Below are positions 9,217 to 64,000 of a stretch of DNA of 64,000 nt, in pieces. The stretch covers positions 166,070 to 230,069 of the IMG/VR virus record IMGVR_UViG_3300028840_005860; one strand, 5' to 3'. A program made the position numbers and the translations under genes. The notes below the pieces were generated by a model. It was not told where the DNA came from. It saw nothing but the letters and a program-made list of their open reading frames with translations, and ran no database searches. The number at the start of each line of letters is the position of its first letter. Positions within the stretch are counted from its first letter, which is position 1.

Positions 9217-9861
9217 ATGCTGGTGCTGGGACTTGATCCGTCGTTGACAAATTTCGGATGGGCCCTTCACGACACCGATGCCGAGGGAGCGCCGAGATGC
9301 GTCGAGAGAGGGCGCTTCAGGACGGGTCCCCGTGACTTCCGCGACGAGATCGACAGGTACGTGCATCTCCGCGAGGCGCTCCGCGACAAGGTCGTGGAGC
9401 TTGAGCCCGATCACATGGGTATCGAGCATCCCGTCTTCAACGAAGACTATTCCGAGGGGATGTACGGCCTGTTCCTGTTCAGCCTGGAGGCCATCAAGGA
9501 CTGCGGCCAGGACCTCGTCCTGTTCGCGCCTCCCCAGGTCAAGAAGTTCGCGAAACTCATTCTCGAGCGCCCCCGCGGCTGGTCCATGGCGAAGTCGGAC
9601 ATGGTGGACGCCGCGCGGGAGGACTCGGGGGGAGGCCCCTGGAACCACAACGAGGCGGACGCCTACCTGGTCGCCGCCTTCGCGGGCCGGTTCTGGAAAT
9701 TCTACGAGGGGAGCCTCGTCGAGGACGACCTCACACCCTACGAGAAGAAGACGTTCACGCACATGCGTACCATCACCAAGGGCAAGCGCGCCGGCCAGCT
9801 CGAGATCAAGGGGATCCTGCATCGCGAGTCGGAGAGGTTCTTTCTCTGGTCGATGAAGTAG
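9217..9861 (+). CDS. ruvC: RuvC-like Holliday junction resolvase
   Basis: MLVLGLDPSLTNFGW, IEHP, VKKF, KSDMV, HNEADAY; start reassigned to ATG 9217. Confidence 0.88.
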   Translation: MLVLGLDPSLTNFGWALHDTDAEGAPRCVERGRFRTGPRDFRDEIDRYVHLREALRDKVVELEPDHMGIEHPVFNEDYSEGMYGLFLFSLEAIKDCGQDLVLFAPPQVKKFAKLILERPRGWSMAKSDMVDAAREDSGGGPWNHNEADAYLVAAFAGRFWKFYEGSLVEDDLTPYEKKTFTHMRTITKGKRAGQLEIKGILHRESERFFLWSMK

Positions 9862-9870
9862 AGGGCAGCG

Positions 9871-11166
9871 ATGGTGAAGAAGAAGGAAACCAAGAAGACC
9901 TCCAAGAAGACCGCCAAGAAGAAGACCAAGAAGAAGGCCAAGGCGAAGTCTGCGCTCCTCCAGGCGAAGGGTCTGCTGAACCACGCCCTCAAGAGCAACG
10001 ACTGGCAGGCGAACCTAGACCCCAAGACCGCCAACAAGCCGCTGGATATCCTCTCGACGAGCTCGATCATCATCGATCACCTCATCGGCGGCAAGTTGAA
10101 CGAACGGGGAATCGCCCCCTGTCCGGGCCTCCCTCGAGGTCGCATCGTGAACGTCTACGGGCGCGAGGGCAGCGGCAAGACCACGCTAGCCCTTGGGACA
10201 TCAGCCCAGACGATCCACGACGGGGGGGTCGTCTGCTACATCGACTGGGAGCACGAGATCGTGCCCGGCTATGCCCTGGCGCTCGGCGTGCCCATCGGTG
10301 ACGAGGAGAGGTTCATGCTCTGCCAGCCTGACACTCTCGACGAGGGCATAGCCATCCTCTGGACGATGGTGAACTCCGGCGTGGACCTGGTCGTGCTCGA
10401 CTCCGTCGGGGCTGGCGTTCCCAGGGCGTACTTCGAGAAGTCCATCAAGGAGACCGCCGAGCAGGGACGCGTCGGGATGAACGCCGCTGTGTGGTCGGCT
10501 TTCCTGCCGAAGCTGAAGGCCCGCACGAGCAAGACGGGTTCGGCCGTGCTCGGGGTCTCCCAGATCCGAGACGCTATCAACACTGGCGGGGGTTACGGCG
10601 ACACCTTCACGGTCCAGGGTGGGAAGGCGTGGAAGTTCTACAGCGCGATCCGCCTGCGTCTTCAGCCGATAGGCGTCGAGAAGGCGTCCGACTACTCCGC
10701 CTTGACGAACAAGGCGCAGGATCGGGTGATCGGGGCGAAGATCCGGGCGAAACTCGACAAGTGCAAGGTCAGTCCGCAGCAGGGGAACGAGGAGATTTTC
10801 TACATCCGGTGGGGCGAGGGCATCGACGATCTACGCTCTCTCATCGAGATCGGCTGCGCCCACAGGCTCGTTCAGAAGAAGGGCTCGTGGCTCTACTGGG
10901 TCGACCCGGACGGCGAGCAGCACGGCAAGCAGGGAATGGAGAACTTCCGCAGGATGTTCGTGGACAACGAGCGTCTGGCCGTGGCCCTGGAGAAGCAGGT
11001 CAAGCCGTTCATGGGCGCCACAGGTAGCTCGAAGGACGAGGATGAGGACGAGGACGAAAACGAGCTGTTCGCCGCCGACGCGTTCCAGGACGACGGCGAA
11101 CTCAGGGAGATCCTCTCGAGCATTCAGACGGACGACCCGGAGATTCCTCCCGACGAACCCGCGTGA
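9871..11166 (+). CDS. recA: RecA recombinase
   Basis: GLPRGRIVNVYGREGSGKTT, YIDWEH, VLDSV, SQIR, GGKAWKFYSAIRL, KCKV; Lys-rich N-terminus and acidic tail. Confidence 0.95.
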   Translation: MVKKKETKKTSKKTAKKKTKKKAKAKSALLQAKGLLNHALKSNDWQANLDPKTANKPLDILSTSSIIIDHLIGGKLNERGIAPCPGLPRGRIVNVYGREGSGKTTLALGTSAQTIHDGGVVCYIDWEHEIVPGYALALGVPIGDEERFMLCQPDTLDEGIAILWTMVNSGVDLVVLDSVGAGVPRAYFEKSIKETAEQGRVGMNAAVWSAFLPKLKARTSKTGSAVLGVSQIRDAINTGGGYGDTFTVQGGKAWKFYSAIRLRLQPIGVEKASDYSALTNKAQDRVIGAKIRAKLDKCKVSPQQGNEEIFYIRWGEGIDDLRSLIEIGCAHRLVQKKGSWLYWVDPDGEQHGKQGMENFRRMFVDNERLAVALEKQVKPFMGATGSSKDEDEDEDENELFAADAFQDDGELREILSSIQTDDPEIPPDEPA

Positions 11167-12427: not shown

Positions 12428-12736
12428 CTACGACCCGGTGCCCGTGTCGGTTTCTCCGGTTTCGGTACCGGAGCCGTCGGTGGGGGTCTCGGTCCCTTCC
12501 GTGTCGGAGCCGTCGGTGGGGGTCTCGGTCCCTCCCGTGTCGGAGCCGTCGGTGGGGGTCTCGGTCCCTTCCGTGTCGGAGCCGTCGGTGGGGGTCTCGG
12601 TCCCTTCCGTGCTGGAGGCATCGGCGGAGGTCCCGCTGTCGGTACCCGAACCGGTCCCGTCGGTGTCGTCATCGTCCGACCCACAGCATGGAACCACGCT
12701 AAGGATCACGGCAAGTACAGCGTGCTCGATCTTCAT
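12428..12736 (-). CDS. Small secreted/lipoprotein-like protein with Thr/Gly/Asp repeats
   Basis: Signal peptide MKIEHAVLAVILSVVPCC followed by TEGTETPTDGSD repeats. Confidence 0.7.
   Translation of the reverse strand: MKIEHAVLAVILSVVPCCGSDDDDTDGTGSGTDSGTSADASSTEGTETPTDGSDTEGTETPTDGSDTGGTETPTDGSDTEGTETPTDGSGTETGETDTGTGS
12469..12611. repeat. 36-bp tandem repeat, 4 copies
   Basis: Unit CGGAGCCGTCGGTGGGGGTCTCGGTCCCTTCCGTGT at 12469, 12505, 12541 and 12577; coding repeat. Confidence 0.95.
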
Positions 12737-24493: not shown

Positions 24494-25258
24494 ATGTCCC
24501 GTTTCGGCAAAATCAGCACGGTCGTCATGCTCGCGCTGCCCCTCGTCGTGGGAGGTTGCAGACCCAACAGGAAGACGGCGACTCCCGAGGACTACTATCC
24601 CCTCATCCAGGTCGCCTTCGAGGCCGGCGCGGTGGGTGCCATGATCGCGCGCAACGAGGCCATCGAGAAGAAGAATTTCGCGGCCTGCGTCGCCGCCGAC
24701 GTGCTCGCGGACGCGTTCGACAGCGCCGGAGACGCCCTCCAGGCGCGCATCTCCGACAAGATCGAGATCCCGGCCTTCGAGATGGACCTGACCGACTGTC
24801 TCGCCCTGCGTCCCGCGACCGATGAGGGGGACGAGAGCGCCCGCCTTGCGGGTCCCGTCGTCCTGATGACCATGGGCCCGGCCGAGGAGGAGAAGCCGAC
24901 CGAGGAAGCGGCCCCGGCCGAGGAGGAGAAGCCGACCGAGGAAGCGGCCCCGGCCGAGGAGGAGAAGCCGACCGAAGAGGCCGCGGCGGAGACTCCGGCC
25001 GAGGAGGTGGACGCCACGCTCGACAAGGGCAACCCGGACGCCGCCGTGCTCGTCGAGGCGATAGCAGGTATCACCCTGACCGCGGCCCTGTACTACGCGA
25101 ACAAGCTCAAGACAGCGAACTGCAAGAAGGGGGTCGCGGCGCTCGCGGCCATCCACTACGTCAACGGCATGATCAAGCCGATCGCGGACGAGATCGCGGA
25201 ACCCGACGGAAAGGTGTCGGTCCCGGCGGTCACCATCGACTTCTCGGAGTGCAAGTGA
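24494..25258 (+). CDS. Lipoprotein with internal two-domain duplication
   Basis: Signal peptide with lipobox LVVGG-C; two related domains ending IPAFEMDLTDC and VPAVTIDFSEC, separated by an acidic repeat linker. Confidence 0.75.
   Translation: MSRFGKISTVVMLALPLVVGGCRPNRKTATPEDYYPLIQVAFEAGAVGAMIARNEAIEKKNFAACVAADVLADAFDSAGDALQARISDKIEIPAFEMDLTDCLALRPATDEGDESARLAGPVVLMTMGPAEEEKPTEEAAPAEEEKPTEEAAPAEEEKPTEEAAAETPAEEVDATLDKGNPDAAVLVEAIAGITLTAALYYANKLKTANCKKGVAALAAIHYVNGMIKPIADEIAEPDGKVSVPAVTIDFSECK
24878..24985 (+). repeat. 36-bp tandem repeat, 3 copies (PAEEEKPTEEAA)
   Basis: Unit CCGGCCGAGGAGGAGAAGCCGACCGAGGAAGCGGCC. Confidence 0.92.
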
Positions 25259-54874: not shown

Positions 54875-56383
54875 ATGCAGCGTCAACGACGTACCTGGAC
54901 GAAGAAGGCCGAGCAGGACAAGACGGCTTCCCCGCCGCCTCAGATGCCGGCCGTGGACCGTACCGAGGGGCCCGACCACCCCGCGTACCACGCGGACCCC
55001 GACGCCGACCAGTACAAGTCGGGCGACACCAGCTCGTGGGCCGAGGACCCCCACAAGCCGATGAGCCCGGAGTCCCCGCCCCCGGCAATGCCGGGCAACC
55101 TGACCACCGACGAGCTCGACCACCCGGGCACCTCGGACTTCCAGAAGACGCCCGAGAGCCCCGAGAAGGCCGAGGCGGCCGGAGGCGGCGGCAAGCAGGC
55201 GTCCAAGGAGCCGACGCTCCGCCAGCTCGCCGAGCAGCGCGCGACGCTCTGCGTCCGCATCGCCAGCGCCCTCATGCCGCAGGCCGACGTCAAGACCGTC
55301 GAGAACAAGGCCCTCGAGCTGATGGACCTCGACGACGCGCAGCTGCGGGCCACCGCCAGCACCCTCAAGATCGTCGCTGGCGAGGAGGAGGAGGAGGAGG
55401 TCGAAAAGGAGATGGAGACCGAGGCCGGCAAGAAGGCCAACGTCGAGGTCGTCGCCCGCGTCGAGAGGCTCGAGGGCGCCGTCGGCAAGCTCGTCAAGGC
55501 GATGAGCCACTTCTTCGGCCAGGAGGGCGACGAGTCCGACACGGACGGGATGTCCGACAGGGAGCTCCTCGCGTACCTGACGGCCGAGGACACGGACGGC
55601 GACGGCATCGACCAGAGCAAGAACGACTACCCGCAGGGGTACGACGTCGAGAAGATGGGCCAGGAGGAGGACGAGGAGGAGATGCTCAAGGCGATGCTCG
55701 AGGAGATGGACGAGGAGATGGCCGTCACCGCGGCCACCAAGGAGGAGGAGGTCACCGAGCCGCTCGCCAAGGGCGAGAGCATTCAGTCGGGCGAGGGCGG
55801 CAACGTCAACCCCGACGAGAAGGCCGAGACCCCTCAGGTCGAGCAGAGCGACGGCTCCGAGAAGACCGCCCAGGACGACGAGGCGAAGGAGAAGCCGAAG
55901 GAGTTCATCGAGGGCGAGGAGTCCGAGGGCACCAAGGAGTCCGACGAGGGCGAGAAGGAGGGCGCCTGCAAGAAGAAGGCGGAGGACGAGGAGACCCCCA
56001 AGGCGGCCGAGAACGACATCGACATCACCGCGGGCGTCGATCCGATGGGCCTGATGGAGGAGACGAGGGAGGCGTCGGCCGACGACGAGCTGATGCAGCT
56101 GTACGCCGACCTCGACCTGCCGAAGACCGTGGGCGAGGAGCCCGAGGAGGAGGCCCCCGTCGAGGAGGTCGTCGAGGAGACCGTCGAGGAGGAGAAGGAG
56201 GCTGGCAAGAAGAAGGCGGCCGACGAGCCCGAGCTCAAGCCGCAGGCCAAGGTCGCCAGCTCCGGCGCCAAGACCATCGGCAACGTCGCCCTCAGCAAGG
56301 AGGCTCGCGACGAGATCAGCGAGCTCGAGAAGATGTGGGAGCACGCTCCTAGCGTCAACAAGGTCTTCGGACTCCCCGAGTAG
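54875..56383 (+). CDS. Capsid scaffolding protein
   Basis: Highly acidic and disordered; lies between the protease and capsid genes; C-terminal LEKMW...PSVNKVFG. Confidence 0.7.
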   Translation: MQRQRRTWTKKAEQDKTASPPPQMPAVDRTEGPDHPAYHADPDADQYKSGDTSSWAEDPHKPMSPESPPPAMPGNLTTDELDHPGTSDFQKTPESPEKAEAAGGGGKQASKEPTLRQLAEQRATLCVRIASALMPQADVKTVENKALELMDLDDAQLRATASTLKIVAGEEEEEEVEKEMETEAGKKANVEVVARVERLEGAVGKLVKAMSHFFGQEGDESDTDGMSDRELLAYLTAEDTDGDGIDQSKNDYPQGYDVEKMGQEEDEEEMLKAMLEEMDEEMAVTAATKEEEVTEPLAKGESIQSGEGGNVNPDEKAETPQVEQSDGSEKTAQDDEAKEKPKEFIEGEESEGTKESDEGEKEGACKKKAEDEETPKAAENDIDITAGVDPMGLMEETREASADDELMQLYADLDLPKTVGEEPEEEAPVEEVVEETVEEEKEAGKKKAADEPELKPQAKVASSGAKTIGNVALSKEARDEISELEKMWEHAPSVNKVFGLPE

Positions 56384-56572
56384 GGGAGCCCGACTCCAGG
56401 GAAACGCCCCATAGTTCGACTATAGGGGCGTTTGCCCTCGGTAAAACGTGAATAGATGGGCCCGTATGTGTACCGGAAGGGTTCGTGATCGGTAGCGTGA
56501 AAAGTGACCCCACGGTGGGGTCGGCCGGCGCGAACACCACCCCAACCCTGTAAACAAGGAGCAGAAGCACAG

Positions 56573-57232
56573 ATGCCAATGCTTGGACAGGCGAGCGGTG
56601 GATGGACCGAGTCAAGCGCCGCGCTGAGACTTCTCCACGTGCAGATCAGGAACGCCACGGGAGTCCTCACCGCGGACGGCTTCACTCAGGCCAACCCGCC
56701 CATCGTCACCACCGCGGGCACGATCTCGACGCAGGTCAACACCGGAGTCTCCGGCGTCCTCTCGGGATCCGTCGCCTTCACACGGCCCGACCAGGGCTCG
56801 AACTTCATCGGCGGCCCCGTCGAGCCGGGCGCCCCCGATGAGATCCTCATCCAGCCCCTCGGCGTGTTCGTGAACACGGCCGTCGGCAACGCGTACGAGA
56901 ACCAGCCGGGGCCCGCCTCGGGGAAGAACACGTACGTGTCGGCTTCGGGCACGTTCGGCAACCAGCTGTTCGAGACCGAGGCGCTGGCCGCGGCGGGCGC
57001 GCTCGCCGTGGGCGCGGACCTCATCTACACCGCCGGACAGCAGCTCGTCGCCTCCCGCAACGGGTACCTCATCATGAGGGTCACCACCCAGACGGGCGTG
57101 GCGATCTCACTGGACCTCGCGACCATCACCTCAGAGGTGGCAAACGGTGCCGCGGCGTCCACCACGCTGGCCATCCTCAAGATGCCGCCCGACTCGGAGC
57201 AGTTCGAGTTGGTCTACGACCAAAGGATCTAG
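56573..57232 (+). CDS. Head decoration/cement-like protein
   Basis: Gly/Ala/Thr-rich beta protein immediately upstream of the capsid gene; AAGGAG RBS. Confidence 0.6.
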   Translation: MPMLGQASGGWTESSAALRLLHVQIRNATGVLTADGFTQANPPIVTTAGTISTQVNTGVSGVLSGSVAFTRPDQGSNFIGGPVEPGAPDEILIQPLGVFVNTAVGNAYENQPGPASGKNTYVSASGTFGNQLFETEALAAAGALAVGADLIYTAGQQLVASRNGYLIMRVTTQTGVAISLDLATITSEVANGAAASTTLAILKMPPDSEQFELVYDQRI

Positions 57233-57247
57233 GAAAGGAGATAGAAG

Positions 57248-58126
57248 ATGCCTACTGGTGTTGACAACGCAGTAAAGCAGCGGCTGATCTCCGAGTACAT
57301 CCGGACTCCGGCAGGTCGTGCCAAGCTCGCAGCCTCCCTCACCCAGCCCCTCCGCACGCGGCGGGACTACACGTCGGTCGGTCGGAAGACCTTCCTCGTC
57401 GAGCAGCTGCCCGACGGGGCCCTCCCGATCTACGACAAGGACCCGGACGTCACCGCGTTCGTGGTGGGTGAAGAGGGCGAGAACATCATCGCGGTCACCA
57501 AGCCGCGCCGGGTCATCTTCCCGTTGTTCGAGATCGCGAGCAACCCGGAGATCCCGCTCACCCAGATCAAGGAGCGCCGCTTCGACCTCATCGAGCGTGC
57601 CCAGGACCTCGCGCGTGCGCAGATCCAGGCCGCTGAGGACGAGCGCGTGTTCGCCGTTCTCGATGCCATCGCGACCAACGGTTTCGACAGCATCGCCGGC
57701 GGGACGAACCCGGACATCCCGGTCGTCGCTCCCATCTCTGGTGCGGTACTCGCCGACGCCTTCGCACTCATCGAGCGCCACGACCTCAGGGTCGCTCGCG
57801 TGTACATGAATGCGCGGGACTACGCGGACATCCGCAAGTTCGGCAGGGACATCCTCGACATCGAGTCGCAGGCCACCCTGCTGAAGACTGGTCTCCAGGC
57901 CACCCTCTGGGGTGCCCAGGTGATCACCTCGCGCATCGTGCCGGCAGGCACGGTGTACGTGTGCTGCGAGCCCGAGATGTTCGGGCGCATCCCCGTGCGC
58001 ACCGAGCTGACTGTGCTCTCCGCCGACGATCCGAAGGCTCGAACCATTGGCTTCAGTGTGTTCGAAAACCTCGGCATAGGCGCGTATAACCCGCGTGGGT
58101 TGACTCGCCTCGTCGTCACGCGCTAG
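57248..58126 (+). CDS. Major capsid protein (HK97 fold)
   Basis: 292 aa; GRAKLAASL.QP.R.RRDY...GRK...LP.GA.P.YD, FEIASNP, AQIQAAED, NPRG; resembles the Bxz1/E3-type capsid family as recalled (not searched); strong RBS and downstream terminator. Confidence 0.88.
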   Translation: MPTGVDNAVKQRLISEYIRTPAGRAKLAASLTQPLRTRRDYTSVGRKTFLVEQLPDGALPIYDKDPDVTAFVVGEEGENIIAVTKPRRVIFPLFEIASNPEIPLTQIKERRFDLIERAQDLARAQIQAAEDERVFAVLDAIATNGFDSIAGGTNPDIPVVAPISGAVLADAFALIERHDLRVARVYMNARDYADIRKFGRDILDIESQATLLKTGLQATLWGAQVITSRIVPAGTVYVCCEPEMFGRIPVRTELTVLSADDPKARTIGFSVFENLGIGAYNPRGLTRLVVTR

Positions 58127-58140
58127 TCCAACTAGCCGCT

Positions 58141-58182
58141 AGAGACCCCGAAGGGCCGCGAGGTTCTTCGGGGTTTCTGTTT
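58141..58182 (+). terminator. Rho-independent terminator after the capsid gene
   Basis: AGAGACCCCGAAGGGCC-GCGA-GGTTCTTCGGGGTTTCT stem with GNRA loop and T-rich tail. Confidence 0.85.
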
Positions 58183-58292
58183 GGTCGGATGCCACGCTAC
58201 ACGGACAGACCAAAAAGCTCCACTAACGGATTCTGAAACACCGGAAGGCACGGTCTTGACGGCGAAGGTGTTGTTCGTCATGGTACCGAAAC

Positions 58293-61200
58293 ATGACGGA
58301 CGCGGCGGACCCTCGAAGATCTGGACGAACACGTAGGCGTGAGCAGAGACCGACACGCCCGGACATGGAGAGCCCGTTCTGGACGCGTGCCGTTGGGTTA
58401 GGGTTGCCTGAGGAGGAGCGAGACGGGTACGTCGCTCTGTTCGAGAGTCAGCAGGGCAAGAAGAAGCGTCACGGGTTGGTGACGGGGCTCGGACTCTCGC
58501 TGGAGGCGTGGCAGACGCTCGCTCACGAGTTCACGGACTTGGAGATGGGACGGGCTCTAGGGCTCCTCTCGGCTGCGGTGACCGTCTTTCGCAAGCGCCG
58601 GGGCATCAACACCCTGACGGCCCGACAGCGTCGTGAGAAGGCGCAGGGAGGGCGACGACGGTCGCTCGATGACCTCACCAAGGCCCAACTTGAGAGTCTG
58701 ATCGCCGAGATGCCTCTGAAGGCGGTGGCCGCCCTCTACGGGGTGGCGCCTCCCGCGATACGGGCTCGATGTCGTCGGTGGGACATTTACGTGCCCTCCA
58801 AGTCGGAGCGCGCCGTTTCCGACAAGACTCTGACCGAGGAACAGAAGCAGGCCGTCTGGGGGATGATGCTAGGCGACGGGCACCTGACCGAGACGGGCTA
58901 CTTTAGGCTGGCGCACGGCTACGAGCAGTACGAGTACCTGATGCACTGCCGAAAACTCCTCGCCTGCATCGCCCGGTCCGTGACCTACGACGAGTCGGTG
59001 AAGGACAACGGCACGCTGTATCACGAGTTCTCCTTTCGGACGGACAACCATCCGTGGCTCAGGATGCAGCGCCCGCTCTGGTATCCGAACGGTTCGAGGA
59101 CGAAACGGCCGCTCCCCGAGGTGATCGACCGCCTCAGCCCGTTCGGTCTGGCCCTTTGGTTCATGGACGACGGTCATCGGGGGGACGTGGCTTCGTTCGC
59201 CGTAGGCGACGTGCCGTTTGATTTGGCCGAGGAGGTCGCCAGACGGACCGCGGCTCGCTTCGGGATCGAGACGTACATCAAGCCGCACAGTCGTCACACG
59301 ACCTGCAAGAGTTTGGCGATCCGCGGCGCGAGCCTCGACAGGTTTTTCTCTCTCATAAGGGACTACGTTCCGAACAACCTGTTGCACAAGCTGCCCGCTT
59401 CTTACTGGAAGGAGGGCACGCGCGCTGAGGGTCGTGTGGACGAGACGGACGGGCGCCTGTTCCCGAGAAGCGTTGCCGCACGCAGCAGAGACTACGAGAC
59501 CTTAGACGACCAGGAACGGGAGATTCTCGTGGACGAGGTGGTGGAGTACTGGCGCCGAGAGGGGTTTCCCTTTCACGAGCCTCGCGTGCGAGACCTGAGG
59601 ACGCTGGTGAACGTGACGGGGCGCCAGGCATTGAAGGGAGACCTGCTGCGGGCGTGGCAGGTGGGGCAGTCGTCCTGTCTGGCTTTCCAGCCCCATTACT
59701 GGGAAACGCCGGTTCACGGGCGAGAGGGCGAGACGCCGCTTGAGAGGTTCGGACGCGACGACGATCTGCGGAGGGAGATTCTGCGACTCCTCACGAAGGG
59801 GCGCGTTCCGAATGGTGCTCGTCTGAGGTCGGCCCTAGCGGGATCTCACAACTCGGTGTCGAACTTTCGTCCGAGCTCCGCGAAGGTTCTGGTGGAACGG
59901 TTCTGTCCCACGGGAGGCACAGTGTGGGACCCTTGCGCTGGCTGGGGCGGCCGTCTTCTGGGAGCTACGATGGCCTCCTGCATGCCGCGGTACGTCGCGT
60001 GCGAACCGCAGCCCTTGACGTTGCAGGGGTTGCGCGCGCTCGTTGACTGGCTGGGGCGGTTCGTGCCGGGTGCCGAAGAACGAGTCGAGCTCCACGCGGC
60101 CCCCGCGGAAGACTTCGAGCCGCCTTCTGGTCTTGACCTTGTCTTCACGAGTCCTCCGTATTTCAAGAAGGAGGTCTACGGGCACGAGGACACGCAGTCG
60201 TGGGTCCGTTATCCGAGCTACAGGGAGTGGATCGAGGGTTTCCTGGCTCCGGTCATGGTCAGGGCTCGCGATAGGCTCAGGCCCGGCGGCTGGCTCGTGC
60301 TCAACGTCGCGGACGTCACCATCGAAGGAAATCGCTATCCTCTCGTAGCGGACGCGAGGCGCGTGGCCGAGGAACTCGGACTCGGGGAGCCTGAGATCCT
60401 TCGCTACGAGCTCCCGTCGCTGCTCGGGGACGACCGCGAGGAGCCCGTCCTCTGTTGGTCGAAGTCAAGGGAGGCCACGCACCATCTCGGAGGTCCAGGG
60501 TTGCAGCTCGTCATGTGCGAGAAGTGTGGTCGGGTCACGGACCATCGGGTGCTTCGCGCTGGGATCTGCCCCTCCTGTGATGCGAAGGTCGTACGCTGTC
60601 AGTACCCGGGTTGTGGAAAGGACCTCCCCGGCGCCATCGCGACCCGCAGGTACTGTGATGACTGCGCCAGGAGGATCGACGCCGAACGGGCTCGGGATCG
60701 TCGGCGCGTCCTCCGGGAAAGGGTCCCCGTCAGAGTAATCAGGAAGTTTACCTGTACATGCGGGGTCGAATTCGAAGTACCAACGGACGGAGGGCGCCCC
60801 CGTGCATGCCCTTCCTGCACGAGCGCCCGCAAGGCCGAGGAGGCCGAAGCCGAGATCCGACGTCGCACCAAGACCTGCGCCTACCGACACTGTGATCGCG
60901 CGTTCGTAGATCATAGTCCGAGGAACAGTGCGAAATTCTGTCACGAGGAGCATCGGCGACGTGAGAAGGCATTTCGAACTGGTCGTGTTACCAGCGTAAA
61001 GGACTTCCGCAAGTCCGATCCCGTGTTGGACGAGAGGCCGTCCTCGGCGATCCACACCTGCAAGGGATGCGGAAACCCCTTCGAGTTGCCGAAGGGATCA
61101 CAGAGAACGCGATGTTCCGACTGCGAAGCCGAAGCGCGGAAGAAGGTCTGCAAGACGGAAGGCTGCGAGACGGAGTTTCACGACGAGTCCGAGCGCAACA

Positions 61201-61436
61201 ATCGGCGCTACTGTGAGGCTTGTCAGGCGAAGACGTCGGGACGGACGGGCAAGAGGAGGACAATCCAACGCAAACTCGATCCCGACAGGCTCGCCGTTCT
61301 CGCGGCTGCGGGCGTGCCTATCAAGAAGATGGCTGAGGTGTTGGGGGTAGGTGCTTCGACGCTCGATCGGTATCTCCGCAAGCACGGCATCGAGCACCCA
61401 CGGACGGGGGGCAACCCGAAGCACCGAGGCGCCTGA
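58293..61436 (+). CDS. Fusion: HTH + LAGLIDADG endonuclease + amino-DNA methyltransferase + zinc ribbons + HTH
   Basis: WGMMLGDG and LALWFMDDG; NFRP, WDPCAGWGGR (motif I), FTSPPYF (motif IV); many CxxC pairs; C-terminal IKKMAEVLGVGASTL. Confidence 0.85.
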   Translation: MTDAADPRRSGRTRRREQRPTRPDMESPFWTRAVGLGLPEEERDGYVALFESQQGKKKRHGLVTGLGLSLEAWQTLAHEFTDLEMGRALGLLSAAVTVFRKRRGINTLTARQRREKAQGGRRRSLDDLTKAQLESLIAEMPLKAVAALYGVAPPAIRARCRRWDIYVPSKSERAVSDKTLTEEQKQAVWGMMLGDGHLTETGYFRLAHGYEQYEYLMHCRKLLACIARSVTYDESVKDNGTLYHEFSFRTDNHPWLRMQRPLWYPNGSRTKRPLPEVIDRLSPFGLALWFMDDGHRGDVASFAVGDVPFDLAEEVARRTAARFGIETYIKPHSRHTTCKSLAIRGASLDRFFSLIRDYVPNNLLHKLPASYWKEGTRAEGRVDETDGRLFPRSVAARSRDYETLDDQEREILVDEVVEYWRREGFPFHEPRVRDLRTLVNVTGRQALKGDLLRAWQVGQSSCLAFQPHYWETPVHGREGETPLERFGRDDDLRREILRLLTKGRVPNGARLRSALAGSHNSVSNFRPSSAKVLVERFCPTGGTVWDPCAGWGGRLLGATMASCMPRYVACEPQPLTLQGLRALVDWLGRFVPGAEERVELHAAPAEDFEPPSGLDLVFTSPPYFKKEVYGHEDTQSWVRYPSYREWIEGFLAPVMVRARDRLRPGGWLVLNVADVTIEGNRYPLVADARRVAEELGLGEPEILRYELPSLLGDDREEPVLCWSKSREATHHLGGPGLQLVMCEKCGRVTDHRVLRAGICPSCDAKVVRCQYPGCGKDLPGAIATRRYCDDCARRIDAERARDRRRVLRERVPVRVIRKFTCTCGVEFEVPTDGGRPRACPSCTSARKAEEAEAEIRRRTKTCAYRHCDRAFVDHSPRNSAKFCHEEHRRREKAFRTGRVTSVKDFRKSDPVLDERPSSAIHTCKGCGNPFELPKGSQRTRCSDCEAEARKKVCKTEGCETEFHDESERNNRRYCEACQAKTSGRTGKRRTIQRKLDPDRLAVLAAAGVPIKKMAEVLGVGASTLDRYLRKHGIEHPRTGGNPKHRGA

Positions 61437-61457
61437 CGGGGTATAAGGGTCGAGATG
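61414..61457 (+). repeat. Junction repeat copy 1 (stop codon + promoter-like GGGGTATAAG + ATG)
   Basis: ACCCGAAGCACCGAGGCGCCTGACGGGGTATAAGGGTCGAGATG. Confidence 0.93.
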
Positions 61458-61655
61458 GAGCTGTCTGAACGCGTGCGGAGCATGGGGGACGACGAGCTCG
61501 AGCGGGTGATCGCGAAACTCGAGACCGAGCGGGGGACCTGGCACGACGAGCTGGAACGCGACGGTCTCGTCGCCCTCCTGCGGCTGGAGCAGAAGAGACG
61601 AGACGGCACCGAGACGCATCCGACGAAACACGAGGACCGAGATGACCGACCCTGA
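61455..61655 (+). CDS. Small hypothetical protein (paralogue at 63930)
   Basis: MELSERVRSMGDDELER vs MELSERIRSMTDDELER. Confidence 0.75.
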   Translation: MELSERVRSMGDDELERVIAKLETERGTWHDELERDGLVALLRLEQKRRDGTETHPTKHEDRDDRP

Positions 61656-62457
61656 CGTGCCGGTTGACGAACGAGATGCCTGTCGGATCCTTCAGGAGTT
61701 CTATCGGGAGCGGGGCCACCGTCCTTCGTGCGGCGACCTCAGGGAACTCGACAGGGCACTCAGGCGACGGGGAACTTCCCTCTTCGTCCTGTGCAACGAC
61801 ATGGGGTTTCCGGAGACGTACCGCACCCAAGAGCGAGGCTGGACGAGACGGAAGGCTCAAGAAAAGGTGTTCCAGTTCCATGCGAGTCACGGAAGACGCC
61901 CGAGTTGTAAGGAGATGGGATCGCTTCCAACCTGGCTCAAGTACCATCTCGACGAGACGCTGAGCGACTTCTGCAACGAGATCGGCATCCCGGAGGACCA
62001 ACCCCTCCGAACTCGGGACTCGATCCGGGCAGATGTTCAAGCGTTCTATGACGAGCATGGCCACCGTCCGACTCAGAGGGACTTCAAGAACCATGACGAC
62101 TGGCTCCAGAAGCAGGGGAGTTCCATCTCGAGGATGTGTGACGAGATGGGCCTGGTCGGAGACCGATTCGGACGGAGGAGGAGACGCAGCGAGAAGGAGA
62201 TCGAGCAGCGCGTGCGGGCCTTCTACACCGAGCACGGTCGGCGTCCCACCCAGGCTGACCTTCCAGGCGACAACAGATGGCTCCACAGGATCTTGGGGAG
62301 TTCGCTCCCGAAGCTCTGTGATGCAATGGGGTTTCCTCGAAGTCCCCCAACGCGTCGCCGACCCCCAGCTCGGATCATGGAGGCGATGAGGACCGAGATC
62401 CGGGAGTTCTTCGACCAACACGATCCCTCGACAGACCCGAAGCACCGAGGCGCCTGA
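61642..62457 (+). CDS. Protein of four ~55-aa helical repeats (homing-endonuclease-associated repeat-like)
   Basis: F[YH]xxxGxRP...[WA]L...[ST][LI]..[LFM]Cxx[MI]G four times. Confidence 0.75.
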   Translation: MTDPDVPVDERDACRILQEFYRERGHRPSCGDLRELDRALRRRGTSLFVLCNDMGFPETYRTQERGWTRRKAQEKVFQFHASHGRRPSCKEMGSLPTWLKYHLDETLSDFCNEIGIPEDQPLRTRDSIRADVQAFYDEHGHRPTQRDFKNHDDWLQKQGSSISRMCDEMGLVGDRFGRRRRRSEKEIEQRVRAFYTEHGRRPTQADLPGDNRWLHRILGSSLPKLCDAMGFPRSPPTRRRPPARIMEAMRTEIREFFDQHDPSTDPKHRGA

Positions 62458-62478
62458 CGGGGTAGAAGGATCGAGATG
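62435..62478 (+). repeat. Junction repeat copy 2
   Basis: ACCCGAAGCACCGAGGCGCCTGACGGGGTAGAAGGATCGAGATG (42/44 identical to copy 1). Confidence 0.93.
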
Positions 62479-62664
62479 GCCCACCTCGAGTTCCGTTGCC
62501 GGTATTGCGCCTCGCTGATGAACGTGAGCGCGGCGTCCTACGCGGAGAACCCTTGGTGTGTGAACTGCCTGGACGAGCGCATGGCAAGGGCGGCTGCCGA
62601 AAATCCGCTCATCGGCTGGCGCGTGGAGGGCGACTACATGGTTCCGATCTGGAGGGACGACTGA
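62476..62664 (+). CDS. Small zinc-ribbon protein
   Basis: CRYC...CVNC; starts at the ATG of the repeat. Confidence 0.7.
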   Translation: MAHLEFRCRYCASLMNVSAASYAENPWCVNCLDERMARAAAENPLIGWRVEGDYMVPIWRDD

Positions 62665-62689
62665 CCCGAGGCACCGAGGCGCCTGACGG
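62664..62689 (+). repeat. Junction repeat, left half only
   Basis: ACCCGAGGCACCGAGGCGCCTGACGG. Confidence 0.9.
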
Positions 62690-62880
62690 CTGCGCTAACA
62701 GCGCACTCCCTTTTGGAGTACAAGGGAGGAAGGCGCCGGGAGTGCCTGCCGTTCGCGCCTCCTCCGGGGGCATGGTGAAACTTCCTGGAATCCTGAGTCT
62801 CCTGGTCGCTGACCGTTTCCCGAGACCCAGCCCCCGCAACGCGAACACGGAGCCCTGACGGGTCTCAAGGAAAGGATCAA
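62690..62880 (+). ncRNA. Candidate structured leader RNA
   Basis: Non-coding gap with several complementary pairs (TGCGC/GCGCA, GCACTCCC/GGGAGTGC, GGAGG..GGCG/CGCCTCCTCC, GAGACCC/GGGTCTC). Confidence 0.4.
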
Positions 62881-62885
62881 CGATC

Positions 62886-63911
62886 ATGGACGGGAAAAAT
62901 TCGTCTACCGCTCCTCTCAAGACCCAGGCCAAGGCGCTTCGCAAGTATCTGGCCGAGCAAGGTGTCGAGCTCGGGCACTCGAAGTGCCTCGAGGCCGTCG
63001 CACGAACCCAGGGATTCAAGAACTGGGACACGGCGTCGGCCCGCGTGAAAGGGGGTGAGGGGGTTCTTGGAGAGTCCGAGTTTGACGCCCGTCGCCCCGC
63101 GGGGGCACGTGGAGTTCTCGAGGCCGGCGAGGAGGGGCACGTCGTTCGCGTGTTCGTGGACGATCAGGAAGTACTCGGCCAGCTCGTGGACGCGGGGGTG
63201 AGTTTGACCGGCTCGCGTACTCTCCGTTTCGATCGGGAGACCGAGATTCCCCTTCCAGAGCAGGGGGCTCGCGTCCTGCTCCGCGTGGGGAACGAGGTCG
63301 TTGAGCGCGGGGTGGGGGGCGCAAGGTCGGCGCACGGCGAGACCGAGGTGCGGTTCTTCGAGGTAGACGACCTCGCGGAGGACATGCCAGCCCACGTGTT
63401 CGCCAGGTATGACTGTCTGCTCCCCGTATCTCTCCCCGGAAACGATCTCCGTGATCAATTAAAGCACTGGCCTCCAGGTCGCGCCTTCCTGTGGCTCGCC
63501 AAGCGGTACGACGCGGCCGCCGCTCAGTGTCGCCGTGTCGGAGGGGTCCTGAAGGAACTTTCGGACATCGAGATTCGCGCCGACGGACACGACATCGTCA
63601 TCTCTGCCTCTAGCGAAGCGCTGGAGCCTCTGCGGGACGAGGGGGTCCTGCAAAGGAGTCCGGAGGAGCAGCAGGAATCCTGGGAAACGAAGGAAGCGTT
63701 CTCCGCGGCCCTGCCTACAGAGATGACGGAGCTGGGTTTGCCATTCAGTCTCTCCGACGTGCTCAAGTGGTTCGAGAACAGGTACGAGGAACTCTGCGGA
63801 CTGAACCCGGCTTGGGTTCGCCTTCAGCTCGAGAACATGACCCGAGAGGGCCTGCTTCAGGATGTCGGTGACGGGAAGTACGTGGTCAAGGACGAGAGCG
63901 CAGATACCTGA
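62886..63911 (+). CDS. Protein with N-terminal Glyoxalase_8-like (glyoxalase superfamily protein) helical domain
   Basis: LKTQAKALRKYL...G.EL.HSKCLEAVAR..GFKNWDT. Confidence 0.7.
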   Translation: MDGKNSSTAPLKTQAKALRKYLAEQGVELGHSKCLEAVARTQGFKNWDTASARVKGGEGVLGESEFDARRPAGARGVLEAGEEGHVVRVFVDDQEVLGQLVDAGVSLTGSRTLRFDRETEIPLPEQGARVLLRVGNEVVERGVGGARSAHGETEVRFFEVDDLAEDMPAHVFARYDCLLPVSLPGNDLRDQLKHWPPGRAFLWLAKRYDAAAAQCRRVGGVLKELSDIEIRADGHDIVISASSEALEPLRDEGVLQRSPEEQQESWETKEAFSAALPTEMTELGLPFSLSDVLKWFENRYEELCGLNPAWVRLQLENMTREGLLQDVGDGKYVVKDESADT

Positions 63912-63932
63912 AGGGGTATAAGGACCGAGATG
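63907..63932 (+). repeat. Junction repeat, right half only
   Basis: CCTGAAGGGGTATAAGGACCGAGATG. Confidence 0.85.
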
Positions 63933-64000
63933 GAGTTGTCCGAGCGCATCAGGAGCATGACCGACGACGAGCTCGAGCGCGCGGCGGCGAAGTTGGAGGC
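63930..64000 (+). CDS. Small hypothetical protein, paralogue of 61455..61655 (runs off the window)
   Basis: MELSERIRSMTDDELERAAAKLE. Confidence 0.7.
   Translation, partial: MELSERIRSMTDDELERAAAKLE

What the first reader, a model, noticed from the sequence alone, without database searches (positions are those of the whole stretch)
61414..64000. Gene cassettes bounded by a 44-bp repeat, with one insertion splitting a repeat like attL/attR
Seen: full repeats at 61414 and 62435 supply the stop of the upstream gene (two unrelated proteins both end PKHRGA*), a GGGGTA[TG]AAG box and the ATG of the next gene. At 62664 only the left half occurs and at 63907 only the right half; they share the core CCTGA[CA]GG and flank a 1.2-kb segment (leader plus Glyoxalase_8-like gene). 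The gene after the right half is a paralogue of the gene after copy 1. Known analogy: PeSL promoter cassettes that mediate modular shuffling in T4-type phages. Inference: a recombination-driven gene capture/shuffling array in which each cassette gains a promoter and translation start; it probably continues beyond the window.
Basis: partly seen in the sequence, partly recalled or inferred. Interest (0 to 1): 0.75.

Follow-up and report, generated by a model that had tools for sequence, protein, structure and literature searches.

The report
Repeated gene-junction modules in a megaphage
A giant phage carries a stretch of small accessory genes joined by near-identical 27-46-bp junction pieces (the end of a homing-endonuclease gene plus a start signal for the next gene); related strains differ in which genes sit between such pieces, much like the known promoter cassettes of T4-type phages.

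Summary
The repeat is real and not chance. Two 46-nt copies (61414-61459, 62435-62480) differ at 3 positions. A left half lies at 62663-62689 and a right half at 63907-63933.

The window is the end of a 230-kb viral contig that continues into a 213-kb contig, so the genome is at least 443 kb.
- **Left half:** the native 3' end of the LAGLIDADG-HTH homing-endonuclease gene next to the capsid gene. Relatives end GNPFHRGF*, GNPRHRTP*.
- **Right half:** a genome-wide -10-like/ribosome-binding box, GGGGTA[TGC]AAGG, 3-8 nt before many ATGs.

The attL/attR reading fails. The 1.2-kb "insert" is a conserved resident unit: a structured RNA leader plus its Glyoxalase_8-N-domain gene, found together in six other contigs. 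The relative L046 joins the endonuclease tail directly to that leader, so the variable block is A1-271aa-Zn62.

The shuffling idea is supported. A co-occurring strain, 99.9% identical upstream, carries at least five more modules and different ORFan cassettes. Three other relatives independently repeat their own endonuclease tail plus promoter; L076/L094 form a clean empty/occupied pair.

No tyrosine or serine recombinase was found; a RecA-like gene was. Verdict: a PeSL-like hyperplastic region seeded by a homing-endonuclease tail, a new variant of a known kind.

The parts
57248..58126 (+). Major capsid protein gene; conserved left anchor of the variable region.
   Evidence: phrog_2522 major head protein, E = 7e-50. 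It is 89-98% identical in more than 570 IMG/VR contigs.
58293..61436 (+). 1047-aa ORF combining LAGLIDADG homing endonuclease, N6/N4 methyltransferase, CGNR zinc fingers and a C-terminal HTH. Its last 8 codons plus TGA form the left half (L) of the module.
   Evidence: Pfam LAGLIDADG_2, E = 5e-17, plus zf-CGNR, N6_N4_Mtase and HTH hits. Relatives' endonuclease-HTH genes end GNPFHRGF*, GNPRHRTP*, GNPRYREVGA*.
61414..61459 (+). Module M1 (L+R): stop of the endonuclease gene, GGGGTATAAGG box, ATG of A1.
61455..61655 (+). A1, a 66-aa ORFan; paralogue of A2.
61620..61644 (+). Start-context variant R-b (CCGACGAAACACGAGGACCGAGATG) inside the A1 3' end, before the 271-aa gene. It matches 22 of 28 positions of a hapB module (L133 9293-9320).
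61642..62457 (+). 271-aa protein made of homing-endonuclease-associated repeats. It ends in the L-encoded DPKHRGA*.
   Evidence: Pfam PF18780 HNH_repeat, E = 1e-11. No paralogue in the 443 kb and none in IMG/VR.
62435..62480 (+). Module M2 (L+R): stop of the 271-aa gene, GGGGTAGAAGG box, ATG of Zn62.
62476..62664 (+). Zn62, a 62-aa CxxC...CxxC protein. Its own TGA lies 22 nt before the module's TGA and in another frame.
   Evidence: A positional counterpart in relative L151 (Zn57) ends in-frame ...SNPARRGKA* on L-like DNA.
62663..62689 (+). Module M3, left half only (GACCCGAGGCACCGAGGCGCCTGACGG). It is non-coding here and is the copy adjacent to the leader, as in L046.
62691..62714 (+). Terminator-like hairpin (stem 62691-62705) plus T-run, between L and the next box.
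   Evidence: DNA fold z = -2.4 for 62660-62730.
62715..62725 (+). -10-like box GGAGTACAAGG, the putative promoter of the leader. It aligns with GGTGTATAAGAG in L046 and GGGGTATAAGG in other relatives.
62725..62886 (+). Conserved structured 5' leader RNA of the Glyoxalase_8-N-domain gene. Helix 62803-62814 x 62874-62886 covers the ribosome-binding region and AUG. CCTGACGGGTCTC (62853-62866) pairs with GAGACCCAG (62822-62830).
   Evidence: Seven-sequence alignment A6. 46 pairs, 8 with compensatory changes. 93% of cells paired against 37-53% in slid controls; 0-2 of 500 shuffles reach the observed values. Coordinates. No Rfam hit.
62886..63911 (+). 341-aa protein with a conserved N-terminal ~50 aa (Glyoxalase_8 profile positions 4-55) and a unique C-terminal part. 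Its TGA lies in module M5.
63907..63933 (+). Module M5, right half only (CCTGAAGGGGTATAAGGACCGAGATGG).
63930..64000 (+). Start of A2, cut by the window end. It is 58 aa in G001 and 54 aa in hapB, where it is followed by another R copy.
10117..10824 (+). RecA-family recombinase match, a candidate general recombination function. It is not adjacent to the array.
   Evidence: PF00154, E = 5e-44, at G000:176186-176893.

Best explanation
This is the start of a hyperplastic (accessory-gene) region of a megaphage of at least 443 kb, downstream of the capsid gene and a free-standing LAGLIDADG homing-endonuclease gene.

Unrelated small genes are joined by short direct repeats, or junction modules. Each module has two halves:
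- **L:** the last codons and TGA of the endonuclease-HTH gene.
- **R:** the phage's own -10-like/ribosome-binding box GGGGTA[TG]AAGG, a 7-nt spacer and the ATG.

A module therefore ends one gene and starts the next.

**Shown**
- The copies are recent duplicates rather than convergent motifs.
- They are confined to this region.
- L derives from the endonuclease tail.
- R is a genome-wide start-proximal box.
- Strains and relatives differ by whole cassettes whose edges coincide with such modules.

**Inferred**
- The modules act as portable patches of homology for the phage's general recombination machinery (a RecA-like gene is present; no site-specific recombinase was found).
- Cassettes would then be gained, lost or swapped without breaking expression signals, as shown experimentally for PeSL cassettes of T4-type phages.
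- Double-strand breaks made by the neighbouring endonuclease may stimulate this.
For: **Repeat real and local**
- (p = 2e-6 for the core).
- GG[AG][TC]CGAGATG occurs 5 times in 230 kb, 4 of them here.

**L is the endonuclease tail**
- Conserved GNP.HRG C-termini in L046, L049 and L052.

**R is a genome-wide box**
- GGGTANAA precedes a good start in 16 of 29 cases, against 9-25% for reversed controls.
- A TTTCACGA-type element lies upstream in 8 of 61 cases, against 1.2 expected (p = 3e-5).

**Cassette variation**
- hapB contigs (L133-L135, L137, L139, L140) are 99.8-99.9% identical up to A2.
- They then carry R at L133 8626-8651, L+R-b at 9284-9318, R-c at 9711-9736, and L+R and R on L139, with ORFans absent from G000 and G001.
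- Homology between the haplotypes resumes exactly at the left edge of an R-like module.
- Both haplotypes occur in the same metagenomes.

**Anchors**
- L046 has endonuclease tail, then box, then leader, with no cassette.
- The window has three genes there and L151 has five.

**Independent parallels**
- L151 repeats its own tail+box, GTCCGAGGAAGGGGTAGAAGGA, at 100% identity.
- L094 repeats about 100 nt of tail+promoter three times.
- L076 lacks one cassette relative to L094, with an 81-nt repeat at the boundary and 97-98% identical flanks.

**Enzymes**
- RecA-like gene present.
- Phage_integrase and Resolvase families absent from 443 kb, with positive controls ringing.
Against: - For the window's own cassettes (A1-271, Zn62) no variant order was found in 10 contigs from at least 7 samples.
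- No deletion or circle joint was found in three runs. These were Logan contigs, which drop rare variants.
- The left breakpoint between the two haplotypes lies inside A2, about 70 nt before the next module, not cleanly in a module.
- L046 is distant: its endonuclease C-terminus is only about 56% identical. The empty-site inference for the window therefore rests on a diverged relative.
- Modules are 27-46 bp, at the low end of what homologous recombination uses.
- Promoter activity of the modules is unproven, and they lack the -35-like TTTCACGA element.
- L and R halves reassort at one constant core, CTGACGG. General homologous recombination does not by itself predict this.
Confidence: 0.55

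Rival explanations
1. Endonuclease-driven scars. The LAGLIDADG enzyme cuts at or near junction boxes in co-infecting genomes or ectopic copies. Repair copies from the box next to the endonuclease gene and drags in a variable length of the gene's tail. The L copies are then co-conversion scars, and the endonuclease is the engine of cassette turnover.
For: - In four of about 14 genotypes, what is repeated downstream is specifically the endonuclease tail plus the adjacent promoter.
- L tracts have variable left ends (27, about 20 and about 12 nt) but run continuously into R.
- The array starts immediately after the endonuclease gene.
Against: - No cleavage site is known.
- L also occurs without R (62663-62689).
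- The endonuclease ORF is split by a 2-nt deletion in some strains without visible consequence.
- The 9/25 versus 82/1200 enrichment counts non-independent loci.
Confidence: 0.15
2. Pure regulatory conservation. The modules are similar only because each gene needs the same promoter or ribosome-binding context, perhaps bound by one regulator. They play no part in rearrangement.
For: - The R box is genome-wide and start-proximal.
- The variant R-b keeps a Shine-Dalgarno-like GGAGGA at the same spacing.
Against: - Two copies are 43 of 46 identical, including 24 nt that are coding sequence of an unrelated upstream gene.
- L is non-coding and out of frame in other copies.
- Modules of this exact type are absent from the other 440 kb.
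- Indel edges coincide with modules.
Confidence: 0.1
3. Site-specific recombination at the 7-bp core CTGACGG, integron- or att-like, by an unrecognised recombinase.
For: L and R halves occur in different combinations that always break at the same core: L+R, L+hairpin, L+R-b, and non-L+R three times.
Against: - No tyrosine or serine recombinase in 443 kb, with controls positive.
- No inverted repeat or attC-like fold: z = +1.4 and +2.0.
- The core contains the stop codon and is partly fixed by function.
- In the leader it is fixed by an RNA helix.
- Other relatives use quite different module sequences.
- The supposed attL/attR pair flanks a conserved resident unit.
Confidence: 0.05
4. Fossil duplication. 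One or two old segmental duplications of the endonuclease tail, box and A gene, followed by gene replacement. The repeats are inert leftovers with no ongoing role.
For: - A1 and A2 and their upstream R form a 92-nt, 78% duplication.
- The window's order is invariant in all close contigs.
Against: - M1 and M2 are far more alike (93-95%) than A1/A2 DNA (78%).
- hapB adds five modules and different cassettes at 99.9% flank identity.
- The same pattern arose independently with different sequences in L151 and in L094/L076.
Confidence: 0.1

Closest known systems
PeSL (promoter-early stem-loop) cassettes of T4-type phages (Arbiol et al. 2010, PMC2839356; Comeau et al. 2014, PMC4122927)
   Same: [quoted passage not shown]
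- They cluster in hyperplastic regions rich in ORFans.
- They carry expression signals.
- Indels and replacements between close relatives are bounded by them.
- No dedicated recombinase is involved; the phage's general recombination is invoked.
   Different: - The modules here are shorter (27-46 bp against about 100 bp). The AT-rich relatives L094 and L076 have 80-190 bp.
- Most lack the stem-loop terminator; only 62691-62705 has one.
- There is no canonical sigma-70 -35/-10 pair.
- The left half is the coding tail of a homing-endonuclease gene and often supplies the C-terminus and stop of the upstream protein.
- The host phage is an unrelated high-GC megaphage.
- Mini-circles were not tested.
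Integron gene cassettes (IntI / attI / attC)
   Same: An array of promoter-dependent, mostly single-gene cassettes separated by a recurring site with a short common core.
   Different: - No IntI or other tyrosine recombinase.
- The repeat has no imperfect-palindrome attC fold.
- Each module carries its own start signals rather than relying on one Pc promoter.
Free-standing homing endonucleases with flanking-marker co-conversion in T-even phages (own knowledge: intronless homing of seg/mob genes such as SegG)
   Same: A free-standing endonuclease gene sits between conserved genes and borders a region of high exchange. Sequence next to the endonuclease gene spreads with it.
   Different: Here only the last 12-55 nt of the endonuclease gene plus the adjacent promoter recur, several times in one genome, flanking unrelated cassettes. 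No such pattern was found in two full-text paper searches.
Morons and linker sequences of lambdoid phages (discussed in PMC2839356)
   Same: Accessory genes that bring their own expression signals; short conserved boundary sequences proposed as exchange points.
   Different: Morons are not thought to depend on conserved flanking repeats. Here near-identical repeats flank the cassettes.

Membership tests
PeSL regulatory cassettes (T4-type phages) | Strong sigma-70-like promoter (-35 and -10) within the module | tested here: inconclusive
   - A -10-like box, GGGGTA[TG]AAGG, is present and start-proximal genome-wide.
- The modules lack the TTTCACGA element seen at other boxes.
- The consensus scan found 0 sigma-70-type promoters in 56000-64000.
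- No transcript-start data are available.
PeSL regulatory cassettes (T4-type phages) | Adjacent stem-loop acting as terminator | tested here: not met
   M1, M2 and M5 fold no better than shuffles (z = +1.4, +2.0, -0.5). Only the 62663-62725 copy has a hairpin plus T-run.
PeSL regulatory cassettes (T4-type phages) | Clustered in hyperplastic regions next to ORFans | tested here: met
   All copies lie in the last 2.7 kb of 230 kb and its continuation. Cassette genes have no Pfam family or relatives.
PeSL regulatory cassettes (T4-type phages) | Indels or replacements between close relatives bounded by the modules | tested here: met
   hapA versus hapB. L076 versus L094, with an 81-nt repeat at the indel edge. 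The window versus L046 and L151, between the same anchors.
PeSL regulatory cassettes (T4-type phages) | Mini-circles formed by recombination between flanking modules | not testable with these tools
   Only assembled Logan contigs could be laid. No joints were seen, but rare forms are dropped.
Integron | IntI tyrosine recombinase | tested here: not met
   PF00589 found no match in G000+G001 (443 kb), while 14 of 14 control genomes matched.
Integron | attC site with imperfect inverted repeats folding as a hairpin | tested here: not met
   Single-strand DNA folds of the modules are weaker than shuffles.
Free-standing LAGLIDADG homing endonuclease locus | LAGLIDADG endonuclease domain in an intergenic, variably present gene | tested here: met
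   PF03161, E = 5e-17. Relatives carry 300-1050-aa versions, one to several copies, at the same place after the capsid gene.
Free-standing LAGLIDADG homing endonuclease locus | Cleavage of a cognate site in genomes lacking the gene, with co-conversion of flanks | not testable with these tools
   This needs enzyme assays or mixed infections.
Glyoxalase_8 (PF20066) for the 341-aa protein | Match across the domain | tested here: not met
   Only residues 4-55 match profile positions 4-55 of 143. Homologues share just this N-terminal ~50 aa at 57-90% identity, with unrelated C-terminal parts.

The most novel reading that the evidence does not exclude
The LAGLIDADG homing endonuclease next to the capsid gene is the motor of a cassette-exchange system. 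It cuts at junction boxes, and repair from the copy next to the endonuclease gene spreads that gene's tail plus a promoter. This creates the homology that lets accessory genes be inserted, deleted and swapped. A selfish nuclease would then be co-opted as a diversity generator for a megaphage's accessory-gene array. The pattern recurs across a clade with very different GC content.
Probability: 0.15. Interest if true: 0.8.

Novelty: new variant of a known kind. Interest (0 to 1): 0.55.

Why it matters
**Gene turnover in megaphages**
- Megaphages carry hundreds of ORFans, and how they acquire and turn them over is poorly understood.
- This locus gives a concrete, testable case: two haplotypes coexist in the same sediments, share a 230-kb arm at 99.9% identity, and differ by whole cassettes whose edges carry short repeated modules.
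- The modules are built from the tail of a homing-endonuclease gene plus a start signal, and the same construction arose independently in relatives.
- This links two known sources of phage mosaicism, homing endonucleases and PeSL-type regulatory cassettes, and extends the PeSL principle beyond T4-type phages.

**By-product**
- The "leader" inside the finding is a conserved, structured, unannotated 5' RNA element.
- It covers the ribosome-binding site of a family of modular phage proteins and is a candidate new cis-regulatory RNA.

Tried and rejected
**Searches that led nowhere**
- Exact 16-17-mers of either half in IMG/VR gave only chance-level single hits, apart from L037 (= G001).
- Searches of IMG/VR with the 341-aa and 271-aa proteins found nothing.
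- A1 in the 5.8-billion-protein set found only itself.
- The leader's 20-mer found only L046.
- The L046 contig and the end of hapB could not be extended.
- Rfam gave no credible family for 61300-64000.

**Ideas tested and dropped**
- The leader folded alone was not significant (z = -1.4). Only the seven-sequence alignment revealed structure.
- A 28-aa small ORF in the leader (62772-62858) is not conserved: ACG replaces ATG and the frame breaks in L151.
- CCTGACGGGTCTC at 62853 is not a degenerate recent module copy. It is conserved with the leader in relatives and paired in the RNA structure.
- Zn62 and the 271-aa protein are not decayed parts of the large endonuclease ORF; there is no similarity.
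- The one "joint" reported in the laid runs (64000 back to 61533) is an artefact of A2/A1 paralogy.
- The end of G001 does not overlap the start of G000, so no circle is closed.

**Failed run**
- A first script for the tail-duplication census timed out and was rerun with a k-mer index.

Full report
**1. Where the window lies**

The window is the last 64 kb of a 230,069-bp IMG/VR viral contig (G000) with 65.7% GC.
- A second contig, G001 (213,010 bp), begins with 144 nt that are 100% identical to window 63857-64000.
- Contigs of a sister strain run straight across this point. The genome is therefore at least 443 kb, and the contig break is an assembly branch point.
- The end of G001 does not overlap the start of G000.
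- The gene at 57248-58126 is a major capsid protein. It is 89-98% identical in more than 570 IMG/VR contigs of up to 618 kb. This marks a widespread megaphage clade.

**2.

- Two 46-nt copies (61414-61459 and 62435-62480) differ at 3 positions. A 33-nt probe has 0 chance expectation.
- The left half recurs at 62663-62689 and the right half at 63907-63933.
- No other copy of either half exists in the 230 kb. G001 has only the copy at its start.
- The 1047-aa and 271-aa proteins share nothing but (N/D)PKHRGA*.
- A1 and A2 are paralogues, 66% identical over 53 aa.
- The core CCTGA[AC]GGG is strongly concentrated here (p = 2e-6).

**3. What the two halves are**

*The left half (L).* The upstream 1047-aa ORF combines a LAGLIDADG homing endonuclease, a methyltransferase, CGNR zinc fingers and a C-terminal HTH.
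- Relatives carry LAGLIDADG-HTH genes at the same place after the capsid gene.
- Their C-termini are GNPFHRGF* (L046), GNPRHRTP* (L049) and GNPRYREVGA* (L052).
- So L, which encodes NPKHRGA*, is that gene's native 3' end.
- It is copied to the end of the 271-aa gene, where it is in frame. It is also copied to a position after Zn62, where it is out of frame and non-coding.

*The right half (R).* It carries a box, GGGGTA[TGC]AAGG, found throughout the genome.
- The box lies 3-8 nt before ATGs of ORFs with high third-position GC. GGGTANAA precedes such a start in 16 of 29 cases, against 9-25% for reversed controls.
- A TTTCACGA or TTCGTGAAAA element often lies 10-14 nt upstream: 8 of 61 cases against 1.2 expected (p = 3e-5).
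- This geometry fits a bacterial-type promoter giving leaderless or very short-leader mRNAs. The AAGG(A/G) part could also serve as a ribosome-binding site.
- The modules themselves lack TTTCACGA, and a sigma-70 consensus scan of 56000-64000 finds nothing. Promoter activity of the modules therefore remains untested.
- The exact start context GG[AG][TC]CGAGATG is specific to this region, with 4 of the 5 genome-wide hits.

**4. The attL/attR reading fails**

Three results count against a 1.2-kb insertion splitting a repeat.
- **Layout after the left half.** After 62663-62689 comes a small terminator-like hairpin (62691-62705 plus T-run), then a box, GGAGTACAAGG (62715-62725). L046 has the same layout: endonuclease tail, about 28 nt, GGTGTATAAGAG.
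- **Ancestral adjacency.** What follows in L046 is 87-93% identical to window 62714-62779. The adjacency of endonuclease tail and leader is therefore the ancestral one. The variable block is [R-A1-271-L][R-Zn62-L], about 1.25 kb.
- **The "leader" is a resident unit.** The stretch 62725-62886 is a conserved structured RNA that travels with the Glyoxalase_8-N-domain gene.
  - It aligns across seven contigs from different samples (A6).
  - It has 46 predicted pairs, 8 with compensatory changes.
  - 93% of cells are paired, against 37-53% when partners are slid. Between 0 and 2 of 500 shuffles reach the observed values.
  - One helix (62803-62814 with 62874-62886) covers the ribosome-binding region and the AUG.
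  - CCTGACGGGTCTC at 62853-62866 pairs with GAGACCCAG at 62822-62830. That copy of the core is held by RNA structure and is not a recent module copy.
  - Rfam has no family for the leader.

**5. The shuffling idea is supported by comparison**

*Strain level.* Contigs L133, L134, L135 and L137 (hapB) are 99.8-99.9% identical to the window from 55455 through A2, and then diverge.
- hapB has a shortened A2', followed by another R copy (L133 8626-8651).
- Next come a 212-aa ORFan, an L+R-b module (GAGGGCGCCTGACGAAACAGGAGGATCGAGATGG; 9284-9318), and 82-aa and 51-aa ORFans.
- An R-like module (9711-9736) then sits before a 108-aa gene that is 82% identical to the one in G001.
- Further on, L139 adds an L+R copy and an R copy flanking 77-, 104- and 66-aa ORFans.
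- These cassettes have no counterpart in G000 or G001 and no Pfam family.
- Homology between the haplotypes resumes exactly at the left edge of a module. The left breakpoint lies inside A2, about 70 nt before the next module.
- Both haplotypes occur in the same metagenomes. Contig depths are roughly additive: 20.8 against 18.5 plus about 4.8.

*Between conserved anchors.* Between the capsid-endonuclease block and the leader-Glyoxalase_8-N gene, gene content differs:

| Genome | Genes between the anchors |
|---|---|
| L046 | none |
| This window | A1, 271 aa, Zn62 |
| L151 | Zn57, 93 aa, a PARG-like gene, 137 aa, 229 aa |

*Independent parallels.*
- L151 repeats its own endonuclease tail plus box, GTCCGAGGAAGGGGTAGAAGGA, at 100% identity 1.65 kb downstream, where it is non-coding. 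It repeats the box plus start a third time.
- L094 repeats about 100 nt of tail plus promoter three times, flanking 104-aa and 176-aa genes.
- L076 lacks the 104-aa cassette. Its single junction aligns to both L094 copies over 81 nt, with flanks at 97-98% identity. This is a clean empty/occupied pair.
- Across relatives, 9 of 25 endonuclease-gene ends have a duplicate on the same strand, against 82 of 1200 random windows. Several of these loci are the same genotype; about 4 of 14 genotypes show the pattern.

**6. What was not found**

- For the window's own cassettes, all 10 contigs carrying A1 or Zn62 have the same order.
- Three runs laid on 58101-64000 show no deletion or circle joint. The only "joint" is an A2/A1 paralogy artefact. 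These were assembled contigs, which cannot show rare forms.
- No tyrosine or serine recombinase is detectable in 443 kb, with positive controls ringing.
- A RecA-family gene lies at window 10117-10824.
- The modules have no hairpin potential.

**7. Mechanism**

*Most likely (about 0.55).* The modules are short direct repeats that arose by recombination. They serve as portable homology for the phage's general recombination system.
- Whole cassettes are then inserted, deleted or replaced while each gene keeps a stop for its upstream neighbour and a start signal of its own.
- This is how PeSL cassettes work in T4-type phages. There, crossovers between modules and mini-circles were shown experimentally (PMC2839356, PMC4122927).
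- Shown here: the duplication, the origin of L, the genome-wide nature of R, and the coincidence of indel edges with modules.
- Inferred: the recombination pathway and present-day activity.

*An attractive variant (about 0.15).* Breaks made by the adjacent LAGLIDADG enzyme drive the process, and the L tracts are co-conversion scars of variable length.

*An unexplained feature.* The constant break between L and R at CTGACGG is not predicted by plain homologous recombination. It keeps a site-specific reading formally open (about 0.05).

*Other rivals.* Purely regulatory conservation (0.1) and inert fossil duplication (0.1) fit the data less well. The copies are near-identical across unrelated coding sequence, and module-bounded polymorphism exists at 99.9% flank identity.

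**8. Comparison and novelty**

- In function this is PeSL-like. It is not a member of that family in the strict sense.
  - Most copies have no stem-loop.
  - There is no canonical sigma-70 pair.
  - The phage lineage is different.
  - The left half is the coding tail of a homing-endonuclease gene.
- It is not an integron: there is no IntI and no attC fold.
- Two full-text paper searches turned up no description of a homing-endonuclease tail repeated as a cassette boundary.
- I rate it a new variant of a known kind, of moderate interest.
- A secondary find is the conserved leader RNA, which is unannotated and could be a new cis-regulatory element.

Noticed in passing
window 62725-62886; also L151 4846-5001, L154 2495-2651, L157 ~1290-1455, L158 ~215-381, L159 1-161, L161 ~110-277: A conserved, structured ~160-nt 5' leader always precedes genes whose products share a ~50-aa Glyoxalase_8-like N-terminus. 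It starts just after a -10-like box, and one helix covers the ribosome-binding site and AUG. Covariation supports the fold (8 compensatory pairs among 7 sequences), and Rfam has no family for it. It is a candidate new cis-regulatory RNA.
   Followed up: partly
window 62886-63911; P0003-P0012: The 341-aa protein belongs to a set of proteins that share only the first ~50 residues (57-90% identity) and have unrelated C-terminal parts of 150-290 aa. This is a modular family with a constant head and variable body. In two contigs (L159, L161) the next gene is a DEAD/ResIII helicase.
   Followed up: partly
L154 4454-8562 and L156 2274-6382: Two contigs carrying a leader-Glyoxalase_8-N gene (neither includes a capsid gene) encode Cas_GSU0053, Cas_GSU0054 and a Cas3-like HD helicase just downstream. 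This may be a phage-borne CRISPR-Cas module.
   Followed up: no
window 57248-58126 and loci L046-L125: The 292-aa capsid protein is 89-98% identical across more than 570 viral contigs. Their DNA ranges from AT-rich (L076, L094) to 66% GC, and contigs reach 618 kb. That is unusually strong protein conservation across such divergent genomes.
   Followed up: no
window ~60032; L135 1845-4914, L137 426-3495: In some strains the large LAGLIDADG-methyltransferase ORF is split into 559-aa and 457-aa ORFs. A 2-nt deletion at 60032 is seen in run X3. The endonuclease fusion may be decaying in part of the population.
   Followed up: partly
L048 11012-14126: The 618-kb relative has three or four LAGLIDADG-type ORFs in tandem after its capsid gene. 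Further on it has pairs of 25-47-nt promoter-like repeats (16164/18815 and 17389/19224) ending in GGGGTAGAAT or GGTGTAGAAGGAG.
   Followed up: partly
G000 genome-wide, e.g. window-external 73286, 112650, 32597(-): TTTCACGA(A), or its complement TTCGTGAAA(A), occurs about 45 times in 230 kb, often 10-14 nt upstream of the GGGGTAnAA box. It may be the -35-like element or an operator of a phage-specific promoter class.
   Followed up: partly
window 12433-12648 and 24874-24989: There are two tandem arrays with a 36-nt period (5 and 3 copies, 86-98% identical), presumably in-frame 12-residue repeats within coding regions.
   Followed up: no
G001 4110-4146 vs G000 78741-78777 and 76005-76041: A 37-nt sequence is shared at 95-97% identity between the intergenic region before the 362-aa gene of G001 and two places in G000, one of them inverted. 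Its nature is unknown.
   Followed up: no
G000 and G001 records: The completeness estimates of 90% for the 230-kb contig and 40% for the 213-kb contig cannot both be right if the two are parts of one genome, as the 144-nt overlap and bridging contigs indicate.
   Followed up: partly
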